63,919 nucleotides of DNA, filler included, from Octopus bimaculoides (GCF_001194135.2; 6 parts of 6 records of this genome joined end to end with filler, not necessarily neighbours in it), one strand, 5' to 3'; positions 1 through 13,800 are shown, counted from the first letter of the whole stretch. Made by a program: numbers and translations. The notes: a model not told the origin generated them from the sequence alone.

Positions 1-902
1 TATATATATATATTTATTTATTAATTGGCCTTTCTGGTTTTATGTTTGCAGCCCACTAATATTATCATTTCTTATGAATAATAATGTTCTTTTATATTTG
101 TATGTATGTATGTATGTATGTAGAAATTTACAGAAAAACAAAAGACAAAGACAGGTGTATGAAAAACAAGCAAGTGTATTAATTTGACACTCGGGAAAGT
201 GAGCAAGTCTTTTACGTTTCATAGCTTATGCTCTTCAGCAGAAAGGAATAAGAGAAAATAAACAGAGAGAGAATAAAAAAAACATGTGGATTTAGCGATC
301 AAGCATGGCAACTGGTTGGGAAAAAAAGGTTTGACAGAAGAGGTAGAAAGGAGTGGGGATAATAAAGTATTGGTGATCCCAAAACAAAGGTGCACGTGCA
401 TGTGTGTATGTGTAAGTGTGTGTGTGGGGATAGGGGCTAGTGATTTTGACGTGTGTCCATGTGTGTGTGTGTGTGTTTGTGTGCATCTGTAATGTGTGGG
501 TGTGTGGATGATGGTGTGGGTGCTGGGAAGTAGTCAGTGCTAATGTGTGTGGATTGGGGTGGGGTGGGGTGGTGTGAGTACAATATAGATAGTAGATTGA
601 TTAATAAATACACAGTTAATGGATACATACATACATTCATACATATATGCATGTATGTATATTATGTAGGTATATATATATTATGTGTGTGTGTATACAC
701 ATACAGAAGTAAGCAATCAGAAAGGCAAATAAGTAAATAAAAAAAAGAAATGTATGAATAGATGGATGGAGGGAGGGATTGGTGGCTGGCTGGCTTGCTG
801 GCTGGTTGGATAATCACAGGCCTCTCTGTTCCTTTAAAGAAAATCCAAGGTTATAATTTTAATTGAAACATATTTTCATTTTTGATACTCCATACGCAAC
901 AG

Positions 903-939
<37 letters not shown>

Positions 940-1705
940 TACACACAAACATATTCACTCATACACTCACACACTTTATACGCACATACATACACTCACA
1001 CTTTCACACACATATATACACATACACACATGCATGCACACACATGCAAACACACACATATACACATACACTCACACATTTTATACGCACATTCTCACAT
1101 GCAGACACACACACATGTATGCACATATATGCAACCACACACATGTACACATACACACACACTTTATACACATACACACTCTCATACAGAGTGTGTGTAT
1201 GTGTATAAAGAGTTCAGATTATTAGAAAATCATTCCCACCATTAAAAATAAAATATGGTAAGAAAAAAAAGGTTCCAACAAATTTCATTCTTTTGCTAAG
1301 CTGCAATTGAACTGGAAGTGAGAAACGGCAAGGAATGGAATGGTAAATTAAAACATTTCCTTACCAAACACATAAAAATAAAAAACACACAAGACAAATC
1401 TAAGGTAAAGATCATTTGAACTCGTTAAAAATCTAAATGCAGTTATGTATTTTTTTTTTGCATTTCTGTGTTATTTCTCAAAAACATGGCTGAAAGCAAT
1501 GACATGATTAAACAGCTTCGGAAAAAAAAAATTTTCAAAGTATGTAGCTTCAGAGGAAACTGGCACATCTGCACACATGAACTAAATACATACATATTTA
1601 CAAGAGTGTGTGTGTGTGGTGTGTTTTATATACATATATATATATGTATATATATACATACATATATATATAATATATATATATATGTATATACATATAT
1701 ACATG

Positions 1706-1748
<43 letters not shown>

Positions 1749-2069
1749 NNNNNNNNNNNNNNNNNNNNNNNNNNNNNNNNNNNNNNNNNNNNNNNNNNNN
1801 NNNNNNNNNNNNNNNNNNNNNNNNNNNNNNNNNNNNNNNNNNNNNNNNNNNNNNNNNNNNNNNNNNNNNNNNNNNNNNNNNNNNNNNNNNNNNNNNNNNN
1901 NNNNNNNNNNNNNNNNNNNNNNNNNNNNNNNNNNNNNNNNNNNNNNNNNNNNNNNNNNNNNNNNNNNNNNNNNNNNNNNNNNNNNNNNNNNNNNNNNNNN
2001 NNNNNNNNNNNNNNNNNNNNNNNNNNNNNNNNNNNNNNNNNNNNNNNNNNNNNNNNNNNNNNNNNNNNN

Positions 2070-2106
<37 letters not shown>

Positions 2107-2420
2107 TATATGCATGTATATATATTTATATATGTATATATAGTTGAAATTTACAGAAAAACAAAAGACGAAGACAGGCGTATAAACAACAAGCCATTGT
2201 ATTAGTTTGACACTCAGGGGTGAAAGTCTTACTTTTCGAGTCTACGCTCTTCAACAGAAAGGAACATACATATATACATACACACGTATGTATGTATGTA
2301 TACATATATGTATGTGGTGCTTTGACATCTATTGTCCCTTTGGACCATTAGTGTAGGAACAAACAATGGTTGGTGTGGTTAATTTGATGAGAAAAGGTTT
2401 GAGTTTGTGAAACTGCATGC

Positions 2421-2775: not shown

Positions 2776-4156
2776 TGTTTATTAAAATGATACGTATCCA
2801 TATATATATANNNNNNNNNNNNNNNNNNNNNNNNNNNNNNNNNNNNNNNNNNNNNNNNNNNNNNNNNNNNNNNNNNNNNNNNNNNNNNNNNNNNNNNNNN
2901 NNNNNNNNNNNNNNNNNNNNNNNNNNNNNNNNNNNNNNNNNNNNNNNNNNNNNNNNNNNNNNNNNNNNNNNNNNNNNNNNNNNNNNNNNNNNNNNNNNNN
3001 NNNNNNNNNNNNNNNNNNNNNNNNNNNNNNNNNNNNNNNNNNNNNNNNNNNNNNNNNNNNNNNNNNNNNNNNNNNNNNNNNNNNNNNNNNNNNNNNNNNN
3101 NNNNNNNNNNNNNNNNNNNNNNNNNNNNNNNNNNNNNNNNNNNNNNNNNNNNNNNNNNNNNNNNNNNNNNNNNNNTATCATCACTGTTTAACATCTACCT
3201 TCCATGCCGTCATGGGTTGGACAGTTTGACAGGAGCTGGCCAGGCAGAAGACTGCACCAGACTTCTGTGTCTGTTTTGGCATGTTTTTTTTTGTGTGTTT
3301 GTTCCCCACCACAACTTCACAACCAGTGTTGGTGTGTTTACATCCCCATAACTTAGCAGTTCAGCAGAAGTGACCAATAGAATAAATATCTGGCTTTAAA
3401 AAAAATAAGTACTGGGGTTGTTTCATTCAAAAGATTGGTAAAAGATTAAAAGATTAGATGGATTAATGTTTGTAGAATTTGGATAATTTGCAAGAAATAA
3501 GTAGATAATAGAAGTAGACACATTAATTTACTGATCTTCGTGTTTAGAACATTAATTTCACTTATTGTCTTTCTGTATTTAATATCATTCTGTTTGATGG
3601 ATGGCACAGATATTGTCTTTTATTCCAGAGTCATGCCAGTAGCCAATTTGTTGGTTATTGGGTTGGAATGTTTCATGTTGTTCAGTTTTCCTGTTGTTAC
3701 ATACACATACATTCACACATATATCCATACAACACCTATATACATGTATGTACATATCTGTATAAACATAGAAGTACACATACGTTGGGAATATTTTTTG
3801 TGCAATGTCTTTTTCTGTCTCTTTTTCTCTCCCTTTTGCCATCCTCTCCCCCCTACTCTCTCTCTCTCTCTCTCTCCCTCTACAATTTCCCCATGTTGCT
3901 ATCTGTCTCTCTATTTTGTCTTCCTCTCTCTCTTCTCCTTCCTTCTCTGTTGCTCTCCATCTCTCTCTGCCCTCTACCACATAACCCATGGATTGAACTC
4001 AAAACCTCTAGGTAACTGCACAGCATTAACCAGTGCCTGTATTCACCACCGCTATGCCTGCAGGCAGAGTCAGAGTCAATTGTTTTGTAAGGCTTACAAA
4101 GCTCCCTGAGTCTTATGTCAGCTCTGAATCAATTTGAAATATAGAAATGTAAAATT

Positions 4157-4258
<102 letters not shown>

Positions 4259-5347
4259 ATCCAATATGGAGCTGGAAAGCTCATAGTTCAATTCACAGTG
4301 ATTTGATGGGGAGAGTGAGGTGATGTGTGGAACATACATTTAATCACTATAAGCAAATCATTTGTGCAGGGCACTCAGCAAAAGCTGAACGCTCATATGT
4401 TGTCTTCAATGGAAGAGTCCATTGTTATATACAAAGATTACAGAGGTGGTTCAAATCCATAATGCATCTTCGTTAGTTTGGTCTGAAAATTTTACAAATT
4501 ATCAGATTAATTATTTTGTTGATTCTAGAATATTCTTTAATCATTATTACTTCACATTCATATTTTATCAACTTTGTTAATTCTCTTTTAAATCATCCTT
4601 CTTTCGTGTCCTACCAAGGGTCAACTTTTCCTTTCTCCAAGGTTCCCAAAAAAATGAAAGTAAAAAAAATAAAAACAAAAGTACCTGTCATGAACTGGGG
4701 ATTAATGTAATCAACCATTCATTAACCCAACTCATCTTGGAACCCTTTCTTTTATTTCGAAAGAAATCTGTTATGGAAGTGCAATATGGTAATGAAGAAG
4801 ATGTAAGCAATCGCTGTTTACAGAGTGGTTACTTGACCCCTGGAAGGGGATCCCCATCATTTACATGTGAGAAGACTATGAAATGGATTAGCCATGGAAT
4901 AACAACAACAACCATAACAATAGCAACAACAATTTGGACCGTTTATAAATTATGTATGAGGACAGTTGATTGACTGACAAAGTTTATAGTTGAAGTAGAA
5001 CTGATATGAAGCGGGTGGATGGATGGATGGATGGTGGGGATTGTTGCTGAGAGCTAGCAGTGAGAGTAGAGACATACAGGTTTTATTAAAATAAATAGAA
5101 TACAAGTGTGAGGTATTATAAGATATATCAAATTATCATATCAATATACACGTGTGCACACGCATGTGTGTGTGCGTCTAACCAATTTAAAGAGACGACA
5201 TTGTGATACTATGCATATGTACACATACTGTGTATGCATGTATAAGTGTATGTGTATGCAGCTGGATGTGTGTGTGCAATTGAATACTTCTGTTTGTGTA
5301 GCTGTATTTATATGTAGATGTGTGTGTGTGTATGTTTGTATGTGTAT

Positions 5348-5396
<49 letters not shown>

Positions 5397-5826
5397 TACG
5401 TACTTATATACACATATATAGACATAAATATATATATATATATATATATATANNNNNNNNNNNNNNNNNNNNNNNNNNNNNNNNNNNNNNNNNNNNNNNN
5501 NNNNNNNNNNNNNNNNNNNNNNNNNNNNNNNNNNNNNNNNNNNNNNNNNNNNNNNNNNNNNNNNNNNNNNNNNNNNNNNNNNNNNNNNNNNNNNNNNNNN
5601 NNNNNNNNNNNNNNNNNNNNNNNNNNNNNNNNNNNNNNNNNNNNNNNNNNNNNNNNNNNNNNNNNNNNNNNNNNNNNNNNNNNNNNNNNNNNNNNNNNNN
5701 NNNNNNNNNNNNNNNNNNNNNNNNNNNNNNNNNNNNNNNNNNNNNNNNNNNNNNNNNNNNNNNNNNNNNNNNNNNNNNNNNNNNNNNNNNNNNNNNNNNN
5801 NNNNNNNNNNNNNNNNNNNNNNNNNN

Positions 5827-5875
<49 letters not shown>

Positions 5876-6004
5876 TGAATAATTATATGTAGATGGATAC
5901 AAGTACTTTCACACAGTTTTATGAATACGTATGTGTATATGTATGTATGTTGTGATCATGTTGTATGCAATATACAACATAATCAGACATGTCACTATGT
6001 GAGA

Positions 6005-6091
<87 letters not shown>

Positions 6092-6604
6092 CACACACAC
6101 ATATATGTGTGTGTGTGTGTGTGTATATACATACATAAATGCATGCATACACACACACACACACACACACATACACACACACATGTATGTATGTATATGT
6201 ATGTATACTTGAGTATCCAGGTGCAGGCATGGTCGCATGGCTTCAAGTTCAGTCCCATTGTGTTGCACCTTGGGCAAATGTCTGAGCCTGCCAAAACCTT
6301 GTGAGTGGATTTTGAAATTAGAAACTGAAAGAAATCCTTAGTATGTGTGTGTATATGGATAGATGCATGCATGCATAGATACATACATACTTGTATGTAT
6401 GTATATATATATATCTTCTATCTTTTACTTATTTCAGTCATGAGACTGCGACCATGCTGGGGCACCACCTTGAAGAATTTTTAGTCAAATGTATCAACCC
6501 CGGTACTTACTTTTTTATAAGCCTGGTACTTATCCTTTCGGTCTCTTTTGCCAGACCACCCTCTATAATCAAAGAGAAAGAATTGGCAAAGTCAATATTC
6601 ACAA

Positions 6605-6678
6605 TAGCCAAATGCCTTGTCATCTAATTAGTGACGCACATGAATAGATCAACGAGATTCCCACTGTCCCTATCTACT
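6605..6678 (+). rRNA. Isolated 74-bp 28S rRNA-derived fragment (non-functional dispersed copy)
   Basis: TAGCCAAATGCCTTGTCATCTAATTAGTGACGCACATGAATAGATCAACGAGATTCCCACTGTCCCTATCTACT matches the conserved LSU rRNA segment that follows ...CTTAAGG, with a few substitutions (two at CpG sites). Flanks are not rDNA. Confidence 0.9.
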
Positions 6679-7130
6679 GCCCTGCTGATGTGAATGTCTC
6701 TTCCAAAATCAAAGGTAAAGAGGATAACTCTGGACAACTGCTCTGAAATCTCCTGCTGCTATATTCAGATTATAAATTCATATATATGTTTGTTTGTTTG
6801 TAAATGCCTTAGTAAAAATTTGTATACATTAGGGTTTTAGGAAAAGAAATCAACCAGCTAACTCGCACATTAAATACAATCTGTAAGAGGAACAGAAGCA
6901 ATATGCAAGTCTTTTATCAAGTTTAAAATTTGCTTTTGCTCTCTGTGTTCCAACAATGGAGCTTTGTATCATTGTTAGAAACTACTTCTTTCCTTACAAG
7001 AAGATTTCAAATAATTAAGAATAGGACAAATATACATGTAAGTGATATATGCCTCTAAGCACTGACTCCACATTGAGTCAGTGAATGTGAAAAAGCTCAG
7101 AAGAAGTGAGTATAAATGTATTTATTTTTT

Positions 7131-7168
<38 letters not shown>

Positions 7169-7187
7169 TATATACATACATGCATAC

Positions 7188-7254
<67 letters not shown>

Positions 7255-10200
7255 CACACATAAACCTACGTATATTTTAAAGCTCATAGGAAGTAAATAT
7301 ATATATAAGTATATAAATATATTTATTCACTGCATTCTAAACTTGATGCAGATTTTAAAGAACAGAAATATTATCCTAACAAAACAACAACACTCTCTGC
7401 TAAAACAGCTCTAAAATGTTCATTCATGTACATCTATCATGTGCATACAAACATGCACACGTGCACACACACACACATACATGAATAATTATATGTAGAT
7501 GGATACAAGTACTTTCACACAGTTTTATGAATACGTATGTGTATATGTATGTATGTTGTATGTATGCATGGATGTATGTATATATATAGATATATGTGTA
7601 TATATACATATACATATATATATTATATGCATTATATTTGATTATTTATATATTTTGTGTGTGTGTGTATTTGTATACAAGCATATATATAATGGGAGGG
7701 AGAAATATAGATATGTACCCATACAATTTTTGTAAACATTTATATGCATATATACATACATGTAAACACAGACACTCACACGCATGCATATAATATAATA
7801 TTTAGTAGAAGATGAAGACAGAGAGGTAGAAAGAGAGAGAAATATACTCCCCCCACATACACACAGACACACACACACATAATTCATATTTTGATTATAT
7901 ATATGTGTGTATATATATATATATATAACATTTGGAGATATATGTATATATACATAGATATAAAGACCTTCATACACATATAGTTCTCCTTGTTTTCCCC
8001 TCCCGTTCTTCCAGTTCTCTTGGGTGTGTTAGTTCCCCAACTGGAATAAATTGGCAGCAACAGAGAATGATTATTTCCAATTCTCTTTTCTGCCATTATT
8101 GTCTTGTCAAAAAACATTATCAGCAGAATGGATATTTTATTCTGCCGCCATTGCTTGCCATTCCTGGGGAATATTCTACAAAAGACTGATTATACAATAC
8201 AAATATGAAGTAGGGAAGTTGCAGAGAAATATATTGCATAAATTTGTAAATTTTTTATTTATTTCAAAGAAAAAAAAAATCACCAAAAGTAGAATTCCTG
8301 CATTTTTTTTTTTTACTGATTTTGCTGTTCTGTGCAGTGTCAGGCATTGTCCTTTTGAAAAGATAAACTAGTGAGTCTTATATAAATATGTTGATATTTA
8401 GACAATGTGCATGTAAATATATAAAGCTTCACTTGTTAGTGAACCTACCATGGTACTTATTAATATGTGTCATGCCTTTGGGAATTGCAACAGAAGGATA
8501 GGTATGGACACATGTTTCTAACTTTACAGACATCATCAGACAACAGTTGTCCTATATGGAACACAGAAGAGGAGATACTTAGACATATACAAAAAGTGTA
8601 GAATACAATTATAACCTAAGGTAATTTTGTATAAGTTGAATGAAAATGAGCTAAGAGATATAACTCATAGTAGCCATATATGTATGGCACCTTGGGTAAG
8701 TGTTTTCCACTATAGCCTCAGGCCGACCAAAGCTTTGTGAGTGGATTTGGTAGACAGGAGCCTGTGGTATATATAAAAATGTATATATTTATGGGTGTGT
8801 CTATGTGTCTGTGTTTGTCCCCCACCAACCATCGCTTGACAACTAACGTTGGTGTGTTTACATCCCCATAATTTAGCGGTTTGGCAAAAGGGACCAATAG
8901 AATAAATACTAGGATTACAAAGAATAAATCTTGGGGTCAATTTCTTCAACTAAAAATTAAAACCCTTCAAGGCAGTGCTCCAGTATGGCTGCAGTCCAAT
9001 GACTGAAACAAGTAAAAGAATAAAAGAATATATACATATACATGTGTGTGTGTGTGTGTGTGTGTGTATTATAATGAAAACCACAGGTCTTGTGAAATAG
9101 AGCTACCCAAGATTTTGCAGCTGAAACATTAATTTCTTTTGCTGTTTTTTTCAAGTTTGAAACAAGACTGTTTGTCAGTTGGTTTTAAAGCAGATGACAT
9201 CAACTTACTACAACAATCTCTGGCAAAGGAAGGACAATTTGATATAGAAGTAAGGGTTGAATGGAACAAAAAAAAGGAAGAAATAAAATGAATGAAGGAA
9301 GGAAGGAAGAGAAAGAAAGAGAGAGAGAAAAAGAAAAAGAGGGAGAAAGAAAAGGGTTGTAAGAATACAGGCACAGAATAAATTGGTGCATGCCAAAGTA
9401 ATCAGGTTAAGATAACATCGGGTTATCTATAATTACATCAAAATTAAATTAGATACAATAGTTTAAGGATTAAATTAGATACATTAGTTAAGAAATGAAT
9501 GATTGGTTGGTTACACAAGAAATAATTCAAGTGGGATGTGAGAAAATTAATAGAGTAAAAATTCTACTGTTGCCATTAGCTGAATCAAGTTAGCTATGTG
9601 GAATTTTTATGTAAAAATTTTTAAAGTTTTATTAAATATGTGGAAGCAGTGGATCAATAATGTATTATGTTAATTAATTAAATTAGACCATACATTTGAG
9701 AATTTCCAATGCCTCTAATGAGAACAAATTACAGTTACCTCCACTCCTATGTACAGAAATGTACTACCATGAAATTTGGTAGTTGATCTTTTTCTCCTTG
9801 ATTTCTCAGATGTACTTAGCCAGTGAGGTTCTTTTCTTTTGTATTTAGAGGAACGAATACATGATAATGGACTTTACTACATGTTTTAACAGAACAGTTT
9901 ATATATTAAATTCTTCTTCAGACATTGGTTATTATGAGGGCATTTATCATGATACCCCCAGTTTCACATTCTATTAAGTTTGTTATCATAACATACCTTA
10001 TTTATGTTATTTGTGTTAATGTCATTGCTATGACGAGATAGCACATAATTGTTATCATTAATTAATATTAGACAGAAATATATTACTTGTAGCTAACCTA
10101 AACTGGTATTTACTGCCTGAATAATTAAAAGTACATTTGTTGTTACCAATAGTATTTAATTTCTTACTGTTAATTTCCACTATATTACCCACAAGATTAG

Positions 10201-11994
10201 GCATAGCAAAATATGCAAACTCCAGGGTATGTCAATTGAATATCTTACTACACCTGAAGGAAAATGCTTATCCAATATCCAAAGCTACCTGAATTACTTA
10301 AGGAGTGTCAAACCATGGGAGATTTCTGCATAATTTAGTTCTATTGGCTTTGTTGCCATTATTTACATCAGTTTGGTTGGTTATTGATTTTCTTACAGTT
10401 ATACAATGTGTAATGAATATTCTCAGGGTTAAATCTGTTATTATTATGTTTAGTCTGTTTACTCATGCCTAATTGAATTCCAGTTTCCAAATTTTCTAAA
10501 TATGTGCCATCAATATCATGGAAAATACTGGAGTTTTTCAGGCAATTTGCTTCCTTAACTAAAAGGGGGTTTCAAGTCTTACTCACTATGTAGACAGTAA
10601 TTTCTTTGTTTATTATACCACTATAGTAGAAGGCTATAGTAGAAGACACTTGCCCAAGGTGCCATGCAGTGGGACTGAACTCAGAACCATGTAGTTGAGA
10701 AGCAAACTTCTTACCACACAGCCATACCTGTACCTACATATACTATATATATTTATATATACACACACACACACATATATGTATTTGTGTGTGTGTGTGT
10801 GCATGTGTGCGTGTGCGCACACTGCAAGAGGTGAAAATTATTGATCTTAAAACTAAACTAAATTAGAACTACCAAAACAAAGTTACCGTAATTGTCTGTT
10901 AATGCTAGCTAAACATGTACAGAAATATTCCATTCTGTTTGGCAAAACCATTTATATTTAGATTTGAACAAAACTCTTAATAACACCTCAACTTCATTAA
11001 TGACTTCTGAATGTCCTCCAGGAATTACTTTGGTTTGTATTACTGCTTCTGTTTCTATAATCAAATTCTTTGATAACAGGTTCTTCACATCTCTAACAGC
11101 AGTTAGAGTAAGCTCTGTTTCATGAAACAATAAAAGAAGCTTCTATATGGTTACTTGACCTTTTAGAAATAAGCACCAGGTTCTCCCTACTCATAACTTA
11201 TGTGCTGCCTTAAAAATATAATGAAAGACTGCAGTGGACAATGTAAGTTTAAATTTGTGGTTCCCGACCCTTTTTCAACCTATGGACCCCTTTCATTCCT
11301 GTTTTACTCAAATGGACCCCCATAGCCATTCAATGTTTTAAAAAATCCTATTATATTTTTATAATTAGATATCATTAAGGACTAGCTGAAAAGACGAACT
11401 CTGTGCAGACTTTTAAGCTCGTGCCTAAGGAGGGTTCATTGGGTTTGTGGCCCCAGACTATAGAGAAGTAAATAGCATGACTCTAATACGTCTATAATGA
11501 CTACATGCCCCGGTGGTGTTTGATCAGAAGTTAAGGACAGATGGGAATGAATTCTGTAATGTAATCAGTCTATTGTTCTAGTCCCAAGCTGAATTCCAAC
11601 TGTTGGCCAATTTGTCCCAAAGTCCTTATCTCGACATAAAATCAACAAGCTGGTGTTGGTTTGTTTATGTCCCCATAACTTCATAACTGAGCGGTTTGGC
11701 AAAAGACTTTGATAGAAAACATGCCAGAATTTAAAAAAATAAGTACCGTCCAACTGAAATTCTTCAAGGCGGTGCCCCCACCATGGCCACAGACCAATAT
11801 CTGGAACAAGAAAACGATAAAAGACATCCCCAAAAATGTTTGGGTGGTGGAGGAGGTTGTTGCGGTGGAATTAGCAAAAAAGAAATAAACAGAAATAAAG
11901 AAATCTACAGCTGGACATGAGGACAGAAATAAACGTAGAAGTTAATTCCGGTGTTCAGCCTTTCGTTGGTTCATGTATTAAACACACTCTGTGA

Positions 11995-12368: not shown

Positions 12369-13147
12369 TTACCAAATATTTTCCAGCCATCTCCTTGTCT
12401 TAGAGTTTCGGTAGTGGCGCAGGTAGAGTATGTGCCACCCGGAGCAGCGCTTGTGTTTTCCATACACAACCCCGCCCCTTCCGCTCCTATACAAGCTTAT
12501 ACAGCAGACCCAACATTTCCGCCCCTATAAAAAGCAGCACACGGAACAGACGATCCCAATTGATCCTTTTTANNNNNNNNNNNNNNNNNNNNNNNNNNNN
12601 NNNNNNNNNNNNNNNNNNNNNNNNNNNNNNNNNNNNNNNNNNNNNNNNNNNNNNNNNNNNNNNNNNNNNNNNNNNNNNNNNNNNNNNNNNNNNNNNNNNN
12701 NNNNNNNNNNNNNNNNNNNNNNNNNNNNNNNNNNNNNNNNNNNNNNNNNNNNNNNNNNNNNNNNNNNNNNNNNNNNNNNNNNNNNNNNNNNNNNNNNNNN
12801 NNNNNNNNNNNNNNNNNNNNNNNNNNNNNNNNNNNNNNNNNNNNNNNNNNNNNNNNNNNNNNNNNNNNNNNNNNNNNNNNNNNNNNNNNNNNNNNNNNNN
12901 NNNNNNNNNNNNNNNNNNNNNNNNNNNNNNNNNNNNNNNNNNNNNNNNNNNNNNNNNNNNNNNNNNNNNNNNNNNNNNNNNNNNNNNNNNNNNNNNNNNN
13001 NNNNNNNNNNNNNNNNNNNNNNNNNNNNNNNNNNNNNNNNNNNNNNNNNNNNNNNNNNNNNNNNNNNNNNNNNNNNNNNNNNNNNNNNNNNNNNNNNNNN
13101 NNNNNNNNNNNNNNNNNNNNNNNNNNNNNNNNNNNNNNNNNNNNNNN

Positions 13148-13800
13148 CCCAAAATGGTCTGAAGTATACCGTTAGGTACGTTTGCAAATCCTGATGCCAG
13201 ATTCCAACACATTCATATTTAGCCCATTACCTCCAGTGGAAGGTAATATTTGTTTGTTAACAGGCATAGATCGTTTTTCGCGAATGGCCAGAAGCTTATC
13301 CAATCAAAGACATATCTGCAGTAACTATAGCAAGAACTTTATTTACCAATTGGATGTCTAGATTCGGCGGCATACCCAACACCTTGACGACAGATCGTGG
13401 AAGACAATTTGAGTCTAGACTTTTCGCAGAATTCAACAAATTGTTGGGAATTCATAGAATTTGTACAACTTCCTATCATCCACAATCTAACGGCAAGATA
13501 AAAAGGTTTCGGAGGCAGTTGAAGTCTTCATTAAAAACTTGTTCTGATTCTAACAGTTGGTTAGAAGCTTTAACCAGTGACATTGTTAAGAATCAGGAAT
13601 GCTGCTAAAGAAAGTTTGCTGAACATTTGTAGGGAACAACATGAACTCTTCCTGGTCAAATGTTTGAAAAAACCAATTCTTTTAATGAAGATATTAACAA
13701 TTATGTAACCCGGCCCAAGAGATTTCTGTCTGATGTTCCTTCTTTTTACAAGTAAATTACAAAATATTAAAAGTTTCGTTCCTTCTGAAATTTTATTCAC
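13148..13800 (+). mobile_element. Ty3/Gypsy LTR retrotransposon integrase relic
   Basis: Across frameshifts: PDARFQHIH...[67 protein letters not shown]...[23 protein letters not shown], the rve integrase core. A TATAAAA-containing GC-richer block at about 12400-12572 may be its LTR. Confidence 0.9.

What the first reader, a model, noticed from the sequence alone, without database searches (positions are those of the whole stretch)
6552..6775. Dispersed 28S rRNA fragment bounded by the R2 and R1 retrotransposon target sites
Seen: rRNA identity begins abruptly at TAGCCAAATGCC (6605), without the preceding CTTAAGG, and stops at TGTCCCTATCTACT (6678). That is exactly 74 bp, and the flanks are non-rDNA. 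Established: R2 elements insert at TTAAGG|TAGCC and arthropod R1 elements insert 74 bp downstream of that site. Inference: this may be a copy of a doubly inserted rDNA unit (R2-like 3' end, 74-bp spacer, 5' end of a second site-specific element) moved out of the rDNA array, or part of a 28S-containing non-autonomous retroelement. An R1-site element in a mollusc would be unexpected. The CpG-type substitutions suggest it has aged outside rDNA.
Basis: partly seen in the sequence, partly recalled or inferred. Interest (0 to 1): 0.75.

Follow-up and report, generated by a model that had tools for sequence, protein, structure and literature searches.

The report
Stray octopus 28S rRNA gene scrap
A dead 75-base scrap of an octopus ribosomal RNA gene sits outside the ribosomal gene array and starts exactly where the R2 jumping gene inserts, so it is probably debris from an R2-interrupted gene; its proposed link to a second, insect-type element (R1) is not shown.

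Summary
Window 6605-6679 (+) is a 75-nt piece of eukaryotic 28S rRNA (Rfam E 1.8e-13). It matches Octopus vulgaris 28S at 71/75 (blastn E 8e-30) and carries cephalopod-specific bases.

Homology starts exactly at TAGCC, the R2 3' junction. It ends at +74 or +75, where an ancestral-type R1 5' junction (+74) would lie. Neither flank is rDNA. All four differences are CpG transitions, and 0 of 65 non-CpG sites changed.

R2 is documented at this site in four octopods, so the left boundary has an ordinary explanation.

No evidence was found for a second, R1-site element:
- no reverse transcriptase, endonuclease or other Pfam domain in the readable sequence: 3176-5452 upstream and about 4 kb downstream;
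- no ribozyme or R2 RNA element in Rfam;
- no second copy of the 14-bp R1 target duplication;
- no resumption of 28S anywhere in the window.

A 16/20 direct repeat (p about 0.004-0.01) brackets a roughly 120-nt segment with the 28S piece at its centre. It may be a target-site duplication of a small insert.

Genome-wide copy number could not be tested, because the databases lack octopus sequence. The 3' end of octopus R2 was not available for comparison.

Verdict: an ordinary decayed rDNA fragment, probably R2-associated. The R1 link stays unproven.

The parts
6605..6679 (+). 75-nt fragment of octopod 28S rRNA gene, positions +1 to +74/75 counted from the R2 insertion site. It carries 4 CpG transitions.
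   Evidence: Rfam LSU_rRNA_eukarya 58.6 bits, E 1.8e-13. blastn to O. vulgaris 28S 71/75, E 8e-30. CpG bookkeeping.
6558..6604 (.). Unassigned 47-nt upstream flank. It is not rDNA, and its last nucleotides are a candidate 3' terminus of an R2 element (untested).
   Evidence: SINE homology ends at 6557. The last 25 nt of the flank match 28S at 4/25. No second copy in the window. No significant similarity to the four complete R2 3' ends available: Limnoperna, Sepiola, Sepia and the flatworm Nematoplana.
6680..6770 (.). Unassigned 91-nt downstream flank. It is not rDNA and not a recognisable element 5' end.
   Evidence: The first 25 nt of the flank match 28S at 5/25. No match to octopod R2 5' ends. 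No ribozyme family in Rfam. No other copy in the window. No Pfam domain downstream.
6562..6581 (+). Left copy of a 20-nt imperfect direct repeat (TCTATAATCAAAGAGAAAGA), 23 nt before the 28S piece. Possible target-site duplication.
   Evidence: the repeat finder family D3, 16/20. 8 of 2000 dinucleotide shuffles reach it; local alignment p about 0.01; 3 of 310 in-window control pairs reach it.
6702..6721 (+). Right copy of the direct repeat (TCCAAAATCAAAGGTAAAGA), 22 nt after the 28S piece.
6582..6701 (+). Candidate 120-nt inserted unit: 23 nt of unknown origin, 75 nt of 28S, then 22 nt of unknown origin. This is an inference that holds only if the direct repeat is a real duplication.
   Evidence: Geometry. 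A short inverted repeat, ATTCACA / TGTGAAT (6597-6608 versus 6684-6695), lies inside it but is not significant.
6400..6557 (-). 5'-truncated copy of an abundant SINE-like repeat that abuts the upstream flank. A fuller copy lies at about 8660-9020 (+).
   Evidence: Local alignment of the reverse complement of 6380-6640 to 8640-9040. Repeat families D12 and D13.
6771..6800 (.). (TA)n(GTTT)n microsatellite that closes the unique downstream flank.
   Evidence: Sequence. Only microsatellite hits elsewhere in the window.

Best explanation
This is a non-functional, decaying scrap of an octopus 28S rRNA gene that came from a gene copy interrupted by an R2 retrotransposon.

In R2-occupied genes the downstream 28S sequence begins exactly at TAGCC. 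That boundary is therefore inherited by any copy of the R2-28S junction, whether made from the co-transcript or from the DNA.

A short piece was deposited in a SINE-rich, CpG-depleted part of the genome. It held at most about 23-47 nt of element 3' end plus 28S +1 to +74/75. The deposit was possibly a roughly 120-nt insert flanked by a roughly 20-bp target duplication, as LINE-type reverse transcription or repair of a staggered break would give. The piece has since lost three of its five CpGs to methylation-driven decay.

The 3' end at +74/75 is most simply where the copied piece broke off or where the template was left. Its coincidence with the arthropod R1 5' junction is not evidence of an R1-like element.

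Shown: the 28S identity, its octopod origin, the exact boundaries, the CpG-only decay, the absence of element bodies, and the presence of R2 in octopods.

Inferred: that the upstream flank is R2-derived, the route of insertion, and the target duplication.
For: - 28S identity and sharp boundaries.
- The window shares the cephalopod-specific C in GATCAAC and the octopod T in CCCTATCT.
- R2 lies at TTAAGG|TAGCC in four octopods: PMC13188248 supplementary file 16. R2 occurs more widely in Mollusca: PMC5035012 and PMC13580325.
- The 28S flank printed for a Sepiola R2 carries a CpG transition at the same position 34, so R2-flanking 28S copies can carry CpG changes.
- All 4 changes are at CpG and 0 of 65 elsewhere. 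Window CpG observed/expected is 0.34.
- A random rRNA fragment would start within 1 nt of the R2 site in only about 3 of several thousand possible positions, whereas every R2-occupied unit has that boundary (inference).
- A direct repeat brackets a 120-nt unit, p about 0.004-0.01.
- No coding remnants on either side, although the piece shows very low non-CpG divergence: with the positive control.
Against: - The upstream 47 nt could not be shown to be R2. The stored supplement cuts octopod R2 3' untranslated regions at 400 nt, so their last bases were unavailable.
- The flank is AT-rich, whereas the visible parts of the octopod R2 3' untranslated regions are GC-rich.
- The window does not match any visible R2 part, and the flank shows no significant similarity to the four complete R2 3' ends available (three mollusc, one flatworm).
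- The putative target duplication has 4 mismatches in 20. That is more than expected next to a 28S piece with 0 of 65 non-CpG changes, so it may be chance.
- The 3' end at +74/75 remains a coincidence of roughly 1 in 100 before allowing for other notable sites.
- No tail typical of retroposition adjoins the insert.
Confidence: 0.45

Rival explanations
1. The scrap is a small copy of a doubly inserted rDNA unit: R2 3' end, 74-75 bp of 28S, then the 5' end of a second site-specific element that occupies the R1 site in an octopus.
For: - The fragment ends at +74/75, the position of ancestral-type R1 5' junctions (PMC2718515).
- The left end is the R2 junction, and R2 exists in octopods.
- Drosophila offers only loose precedents: R1 copies and an R1/R2 fusion array lie outside the rDNA, and R2/R1 hybrid elements sit in the R1 site (PMC2718515; PMC3414825).
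Against: - I know of no R1-site-specific element outside arthropods, and the papers read here describe R1 only in arthropods.
- The downstream flank has no reverse transcriptase, endonuclease or gag remnant within 4 kb, although the 28S piece is almost undiverged.
- Rfam finds no ribozyme.
- There is no second 14-bp TGTCCCTATCTACT and 28S does not resume.
- The downstream flank is single-copy in the window.
- If the direct repeat is a real duplication, only 22 nt could belong to the second element.
Confidence: 0.15
2. The 28S piece is an internal module of a multi-copy non-autonomous retroelement (SINE- or SIDE-like), and this locus is one of its insertions.
For: - A possible target duplication surrounds a compact 120-nt unit.
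- The locus lies in a genome region full of SINE copies whose tails end in TA/TG microsatellite, and a (TA)n(GTTT)n run lies at 6771-6800.
- TEs that carry rRNA-derived modules are known, for example SINE28 and the 5S-derived SINEs (PMC10946416).
Against: - No second copy of either flank exists in 14.8 kb that holds at least four other SINE fragments.
- There is no tRNA-like or other pol III head and no recognisable 3' tail next to the putative duplication.
- 120 nt is very short for such an element.
- The copy number in the genome is unknown.
Confidence: 0.1
3. A chance rRNA pseudogene or filler fragment. A random piece of rRNA, cDNA or rDNA was captured during double-strand-break repair or template switching, and both end positions are coincidences.
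For: - Dispersed rRNA fragments are common in animal genomes (own knowledge; PMC10946416).
- Short unexplained sequence on both sides plus nearby direct and inverted micro-repeats resembles patchwork repair junctions.
- No element sequence was identified in either flank.
Against: - It needs two exact coincidences. The 5' end alone falls on the R2 junction with a chance of about 3 in several thousand, while R2-occupied 28S genes are documented in octopods.
- The 28S sense orientation and clean ends fit a junction-derived template better.
Confidence: 0.2
4. Draft-assembly artefact: a contig end reaching from an R2 or other repeat into rDNA was wrongly joined to unrelated sequence.
For: - The window is a draft scaffold with four N gaps.
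- It holds a 100% identical 85-nt duplication next to one gap.
- In the published R2 table, several 28S flanks stop 71-79 nt into 28S. This looks like assembly graph behaviour (my inference).
Against: - The fragment differs from functional octopus 28S at four CpG positions, so it is not a slice of the consensus rDNA.
- Both joins are abrupt, with no shared k-mer, and lie more than 700 nt from any N gap.
Confidence: 0.04

Closest known systems
R2 / 28S 3' junctions of octopod R2 elements (R2-1_OVu, R2-1_OSi, R2-1_ORu, R2-1_ECi; Hassan et al. 2026, PMC13188248)
   Same: 28S sequence begins at exactly TAGCCAAATGCC, with the octopod-type downstream sequence. 28S flanks printed for cephalopod R2 copies can carry CpG or other changes: the Sepiola flank has the same G-to-A at position 34, and the Eledone flank is degenerate.
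   Different: Here there is no R2 body and no detectable R2 untranslated region upstream. 28S stops after 75 nt instead of continuing, and the locus is not rDNA.
R1- and R2-derived sequences inside and outside the Drosophila rDNA locus (Stage and Eickbush 2009, PMC2718515)
   Same: In Drosophila rDNA, 74 bp of 28S separate the R2 3' junction (+0) from an ancestral-type R1 5' junction (+60 plus the 14-bp duplication). R1 copies and an R1/R2 fusion array occur outside the rDNA locus.
   Different: Those cases are in arthropods, contain recognisable R1 and R2 sequence, and R1 insertions carry the 14-bp duplication. None of these features was found here.
R2/R1 hybrid SIDEs and R2 SIDEs (Eickbush and Eickbush 2012, PMC3414825)
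   Same: They are short non-autonomous derivatives of rDNA-specific elements, and they show that R2 and R1 parts can be recombined or template-jumped.
   Different: SIDEs have an R2 ribozyme at the 5' end and an element 3' untranslated region, insert into the 28S target, and carry no internal 74-bp 28S spacer. No ribozyme is present here.
Dispersed rRNA pseudogene fragments and rRNA-derived TE modules (for example SINE28; review PMC10946416)
   Same: A short piece of LSU rRNA sequence outside rDNA, non-functional and mutating neutrally.
   Different: Typical fragments have arbitrary ends. This one starts on a retrotransposon insertion site.

Membership tests
Eukaryotic LSU (28S) rRNA gene | Sequence and structure match to the LSU covariance model | tested here: met
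   RF02543, 58.6 bits against a gathering score of 50, E 1.8e-13, but only model positions about 2280-2353.
Eukaryotic LSU (28S) rRNA gene | Full-length gene inside an rDNA unit, with 28S continuing on both sides | tested here: not met
   Only 75 nt match. The flanks match 28S at 4/25 and 5/25, and no other 28S piece is in the window. It is a fragment, not a gene.
R2 insertion (3' junction) | Downstream 28S begins exactly at TTAAGG|TAGCC | tested here: met
   Homology starts at 6605 = T of TAGCC.
R2 insertion (3' junction) | The sequence immediately upstream is the R2 3' untranslated terminus of the host's R2 | not testable with these tools
   Octopod R2 3' untranslated regions are cut at 400 nt in the stored supplement. 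No match to the visible parts. No significant match to the four complete R2 3' ends available, three mollusc and one flatworm. The Rfam R2 RNA element was not found, but I believe that model is built from insect R2.
R2 insertion (3' junction) | R2 open reading frame (reverse transcriptase, restriction-like endonuclease) upstream | tested here: not met
   Pfam on six frames of 3176-5452 found nothing. 5453-5826 is an N gap, and 5827-6539 (microsatellite, SINE-like pieces and some unassigned sequence) was not scanned with Pfam.
R1 insertion (R1 clade, 28S site) | Upstream 28S extends to +74, that is the bottom-strand site at +60 plus the 14-bp duplication | tested here: met
   Homology ends at +74 or +75, since the G at 6679 is ambiguous. 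Junction positions are from PMC2718515.
R1 insertion (R1 clade, 28S site) | A second copy of the 14-bp duplication TGTCCCTATCTACT followed by resumption of 28S at the 3' junction | tested here: not met
   The only other hit has 3 mismatches, lies on the opposite strand 4.8 kb away and is within chance expectation. No other 28S match exists in the window. One N gap (12573-13147) is unreadable.
R1 insertion (R1 clade, 28S site) | Element body downstream: gag-like ORF1 and an apurinic-type endonuclease plus reverse transcriptase ORF2 | tested here: not met
   No Pfam family in six frames of 6540-10700. The method is validated by the rve hit. No protein hit for the six-frame flanks, although that database lacks octopus sequence.
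Non-autonomous retroelement (SINE / SIDE) | Multiple dispersed copies sharing the same termini | not testable with these tools
   No second copy in the window. No eukaryotic genome collection is available. The protein database lacks octopus repeats. The junction 23- and 24-mers are absent from metagenome contigs.
Non-autonomous retroelement (SINE / SIDE) | A pol III head (tRNA, 5S or 7SL) or a 5' self-cleaving ribozyme | tested here: not met
   ARAGORN found no tRNA-like gene. Rfam found no ribozyme or small-RNA head in 6480-6820.
Non-autonomous retroelement (SINE / SIDE) | Target-site duplication flanking the unit | tested here: inconclusive
   A 16/20 direct repeat at 6562-6581 and 6702-6721, p about 0.004-0.01, with 4 mismatches.

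The most novel reading that the evidence does not exclude
Octopus rDNA carries a second site-specific insertion, or a site-specific cleavage, at the position used by arthropod R1 elements (+60/+74 of the R2 site). This scrap would then be a retro-copied or captured piece of a doubly occupied 28S gene. That would be the first sign of R1-site targeting outside arthropods.
Probability: 0.15. Interest if true: 0.6.

Novelty: new member of a known kind. Interest (0 to 1): 0.3.

Why it matters
As it stands, the feature is a small piece of genomic debris. It does show that R2-interrupted rRNA genes of octopods shed junction fragments into the rest of the genome, and that these then decay by CpG loss. 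It also gives a cheap marker for mining cephalopod assemblies: 28S fragments that begin at TAGCC.

It would matter more if a census showed many fragments ending at +74/75, or if rDNA reads showed an insertion there. That would mean the R1 target site is exploited outside arthropods, which bears on how often the same rRNA 'safe harbour' sites are reinvented by retrotransposons. No function is expected for this locus itself.

Tried and rejected
1. A whole-window Rfam scan did not list the LSU hit and gave only mir-297/466/3149-type matches on TG/TA microsatellite, which are artefacts. A local scan was needed.
2. A six-frame composite of both flanks against the 5.8-billion-protein collection gave no hit at E <= 10. 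This is uninformative. A control with a SINE-encoded ORF found one candidate and no hit, and the O. sinensis R2 N-terminus found nothing, so octopus sequence is absent from that collection.
3. Exact look-ups of two window ORFs in the contig collection found nothing on record.
4. The junction 24-mer and 23-mer gave 0 hits in JGI metagenome contigs.
5. The octopod R2 5' untranslated regions, the visible 400 nt of the 3' untranslated regions, and about 250 nt of upstream plus about 270 nt of downstream octopus 28S were compared with the window. Only 6605-6679 matched.
6. 'Tandem R2 copies separated by a long 28S target duplication' was considered, because Sepia R2 shows a 24-bp duplication and Drosophila R2 shows duplications over 20 bp. 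It was rejected because the downstream flank does not resemble the conserved mollusc R2 5' end (and inspection) and the upstream flank is not 28S.
7. A resemblance of 6588-6604 to the Limnoperna R2 3' end is not significant (p 0.4).
8. The inverted repeat ATTCACA / TGTGAAT around the fragment is not significant. The RNA fold of 6559-6800 is no more stable than shuffles (z +1.4).
9. Template switching from the adjacent SINE's cDNA onto rRNA was considered. The SINE is on the opposite strand, so an rRNA template would give antisense 28S. A jump onto the R2-nicked bottom DNA strand would fit the orientation and the +1 start, but it is pure speculation.
10. A reverse-transcriptase stop at a modified rRNA base (yeast Um2347 corresponds to +74, from memory) would define a 5' limit, not a 3' limit, so it was rejected.
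11. The preprint copy of the R2 survey holds no supplementary text.

Full report
**What is there.** Window 6605-6679 on the + strand is a fragment of eukaryotic large-subunit rRNA. A local Rfam scan gives LSU_rRNA_eukarya at 58.6 bits (gathering score 50), E 1.8e-13. The confident alignment runs from UAGCC to CUACU. The whole-window scan missed it and reported only microsatellite artefacts. Against a generic 28S consensus the piece is 70/74 identical.

A species-appropriate reference came from the supplementary table of Hassan et al. 2026 (PMC13188248, file 16). That table prints the 28S flanks of R2 elements of Octopus vulgaris, O. sinensis, O. rubescens and Eledone cirrhosa. blastn of these against the window aligns only 6605-6679, at 71/75 and E 8e-30. 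The window shares the cephalopod C in GATCAAC and the octopod T in CCCTATCT, so the piece comes from the host lineage's own rDNA. The flanking repeats look like the abundant octopus SINE to me, but that rests on memory.

**Boundaries.** Identity begins exactly at T of TAGCC, the 3' junction of R2 insertions, and the preceding 25 nt match 28S at 4/25. It ends at ...CTATCTACT(G). Octopus 28S has G at +75 and so does the window, so the limit is +74 or +75. The next 25 nt match at 5/25. According to Stage and Eickbush 2009 (PMC2718515), R1 3' junctions lie 60 bp downstream of the R2 site, and ancestral-type R1 5' junctions retain 28S up to +14 of that point, which is +74. The usual '74 bp' statement appears in PMC8789037.

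**State of the fragment.** Against octopus 28S, the four differences are C14T, G34A, C41T and G42A. All lie in CpG dinucleotides. Three of five CpGs are destroyed, and none of the 65 non-CpG positions changed (P 1.7e-4 that four random changes all hit CpG positions). The window as a whole has CpG observed/expected 0.34. This is the signature of methylated, non-selected DNA, and the non-CpG divergence is very low. The 28S flank printed for a Sepiola R2 carries a CpG transition at the same position 34. Some of the decay could therefore have happened while the sequence was still next to an R2 element.

**Surroundings.**
- To the left, 6400-6557 is a 5'-truncated, minus-strand copy of a SINE-like repeat. 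A fuller copy lies at about 8660-9020, and other pieces lie at 3305-3404 and 11682-11742.
- The 47 nt at 6558-6604 and the 91 nt at 6680-6770 are unassigned. They have no second copy in the window.
- 6771-6800 is a (TA)n(GTTT)n microsatellite.
- Pfam searches of stop-masked six-frame translations found nothing in 3176-5452 or 6540-10700. The same procedure recovers a decayed integrase core at about 13285-13483.
- Rfam with lax filters found no R2 RNA element and no HDV-like or other ribozyme around the fragment.
- The 14-bp R1 duplication TGTCCCTATCTACT does not recur, and 28S does not resume anywhere.
- The window does not match the octopod R2 5' ends or the visible 400 nt of their 3' untranslated regions.

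No R2 or R1-like element body is present. Because the 28S piece is so little diverged, a body of about 1 kb or more within the scanned stretches should have been detectable.

**A possible insertion footprint.** A 20-nt direct repeat (6562-6581 and 6702-6721, 16/20) lies 23 nt before and 22 nt after the 28S piece. Restricted to the two flanks, only 8 of 2000 dinucleotide-preserving shuffles reach it. A gapped local alignment gives p about 0.01, and 3 of 310 equally spaced pairs elsewhere in the window reach it.

If it is real, the inserted unit is 6582-6701: about 120 nt, made of 23 nt, then 75 nt of 28S, then 22 nt, with a roughly 20-bp target duplication of the kind made by staggered LINE-type nicks. 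The four mismatches are more than expected next to a 28S piece with no non-CpG change, so I treat this as suggestive only.

**Interpretation.** R2 is documented at exactly this site in four octopods and more widely in molluscs. The left boundary therefore has a natural source: every R2-occupied 28S gene, and its co-transcript, carries the junction element-3'-end|TAGCC. A random rRNA fragment would begin there only about 3 times in several thousand.

I therefore consider an R2-associated origin likely, roughly three chances in four across all variants. The best single reading (0.45) is a small copy of an R2-28S junction that landed outside the rDNA and is decaying. In that reading the right-hand end is merely where the copy stopped.

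It rests only on the +74/75 coordinate. Once +51, +60 and the other known 28S sites are allowed for, that coincidence is suggestive but not compelling, and no positive feature of such an element was found. I give it 0.15.

The other rivals are:
- a multi-copy 28S-bearing non-autonomous element (0.10);
- pure chance or repair filler (0.20);
- misassembly (0.04).

**Limits.** The decisive test is the copy number of the flanks and the end distribution of other 28S fragments in the genome. It could not be run. No eukaryotic genome collection is on hand. The protein collection contains neither octopus SINE ORFs nor octopus R2, so the empty result is uninformative. The junction k-mers are absent from metagenome contigs. 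The last bases of the octopod R2 3' untranslated regions are cut off in the stored supplement, so the most direct check of the upstream flank was impossible. The similarity of that flank to a mussel R2 3' end is not significant.

**Comparison and novelty.** The closest known things are:
- the R2/28S junctions of octopod R2 elements;
- the R1- and R2-derived sequences found inside and outside the Drosophila rDNA locus (PMC2718515);
- the R2/R1 hybrid SIDEs (PMC3414825);
- ordinary dispersed rRNA pseudogene fragments (PMC10946416).

The scrap works like none of them, because it has no function. It resembles the first two in its boundaries but lacks their element sequences. I rate it a new member of a known kind, R-element-associated rDNA debris, with modest interest (0.3).

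The most novel reading not excluded is R1-site targeting in a cephalopod. I give it a probability of about 0.15, with an interest of about 0.6 if true.

Noticed in passing
window 8660-9020 (+); 6400-6557 (-); 6215-6340 (+); 3305-3404; 11682-11742: Several copies and fragments of one long SINE-like repeat, about 75-80% alike, whose 3' ends run into TA/TG microsatellite. ARAGORN sees no tRNA-like head. From memory it looks like the very abundant octopus SINE.
   Followed up: partly
window 5868-5953 and 7474-7559: An 85-nt stretch is present twice at 100% identity, in direct orientation 1606 nt apart, and brackets the segment that holds the 28S scrap. The left copy abuts the N gap 5453-5826. It may be a recent local duplication, a microsatellite-associated repeat, or assembly redundancy.
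   Followed up: partly
window about 13285-13483 (+), ORF 13354-13608: A decayed retroelement integrase core (Pfam rve, E 2.5e-5, below the gathering score) just right of the N gap 12573-13147. It is probably the remains of an LTR-type retrotransposon.
   Followed up: partly
window 120-195 and 2143-2218: A 76-nt direct repeat, 88% identical, 2 kb apart, with each copy immediately right of a TA/TG microsatellite. It is probably another dispersed repeat family.
   Followed up: no
window 600-2320, 5140-6410, 7140-7960, 10720-10820: Dozens of Rfam 'microRNA' matches (mir-297, mir-466, mir-3149, mir-5014 and others), all below gathering score and all on TG/TA/CA microsatellite. They are artefacts of simple sequence, not genes.
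   Followed up: yes
window 1749-2069, 2811-3175, 5453-5826, 12573-13147: Four runs of N show that the piece is a draft scaffold. Overall GC is 34% and CpG observed/expected is 0.34.
   Followed up: yes
PMC13188248 supplementary file 16 (not the window): In the published R2 table, several downstream 28S flanks stop 71-79 nt after the R2 site (Sepiola +79, O. rubescens +71, Nematoplana +77, and a stingray scaffold gap at +78). This is close to the +74/75 limit seen here. It is probably an assembly or extraction effect, but it is worth a look in case something real interrupts 28S there.
   Followed up: no
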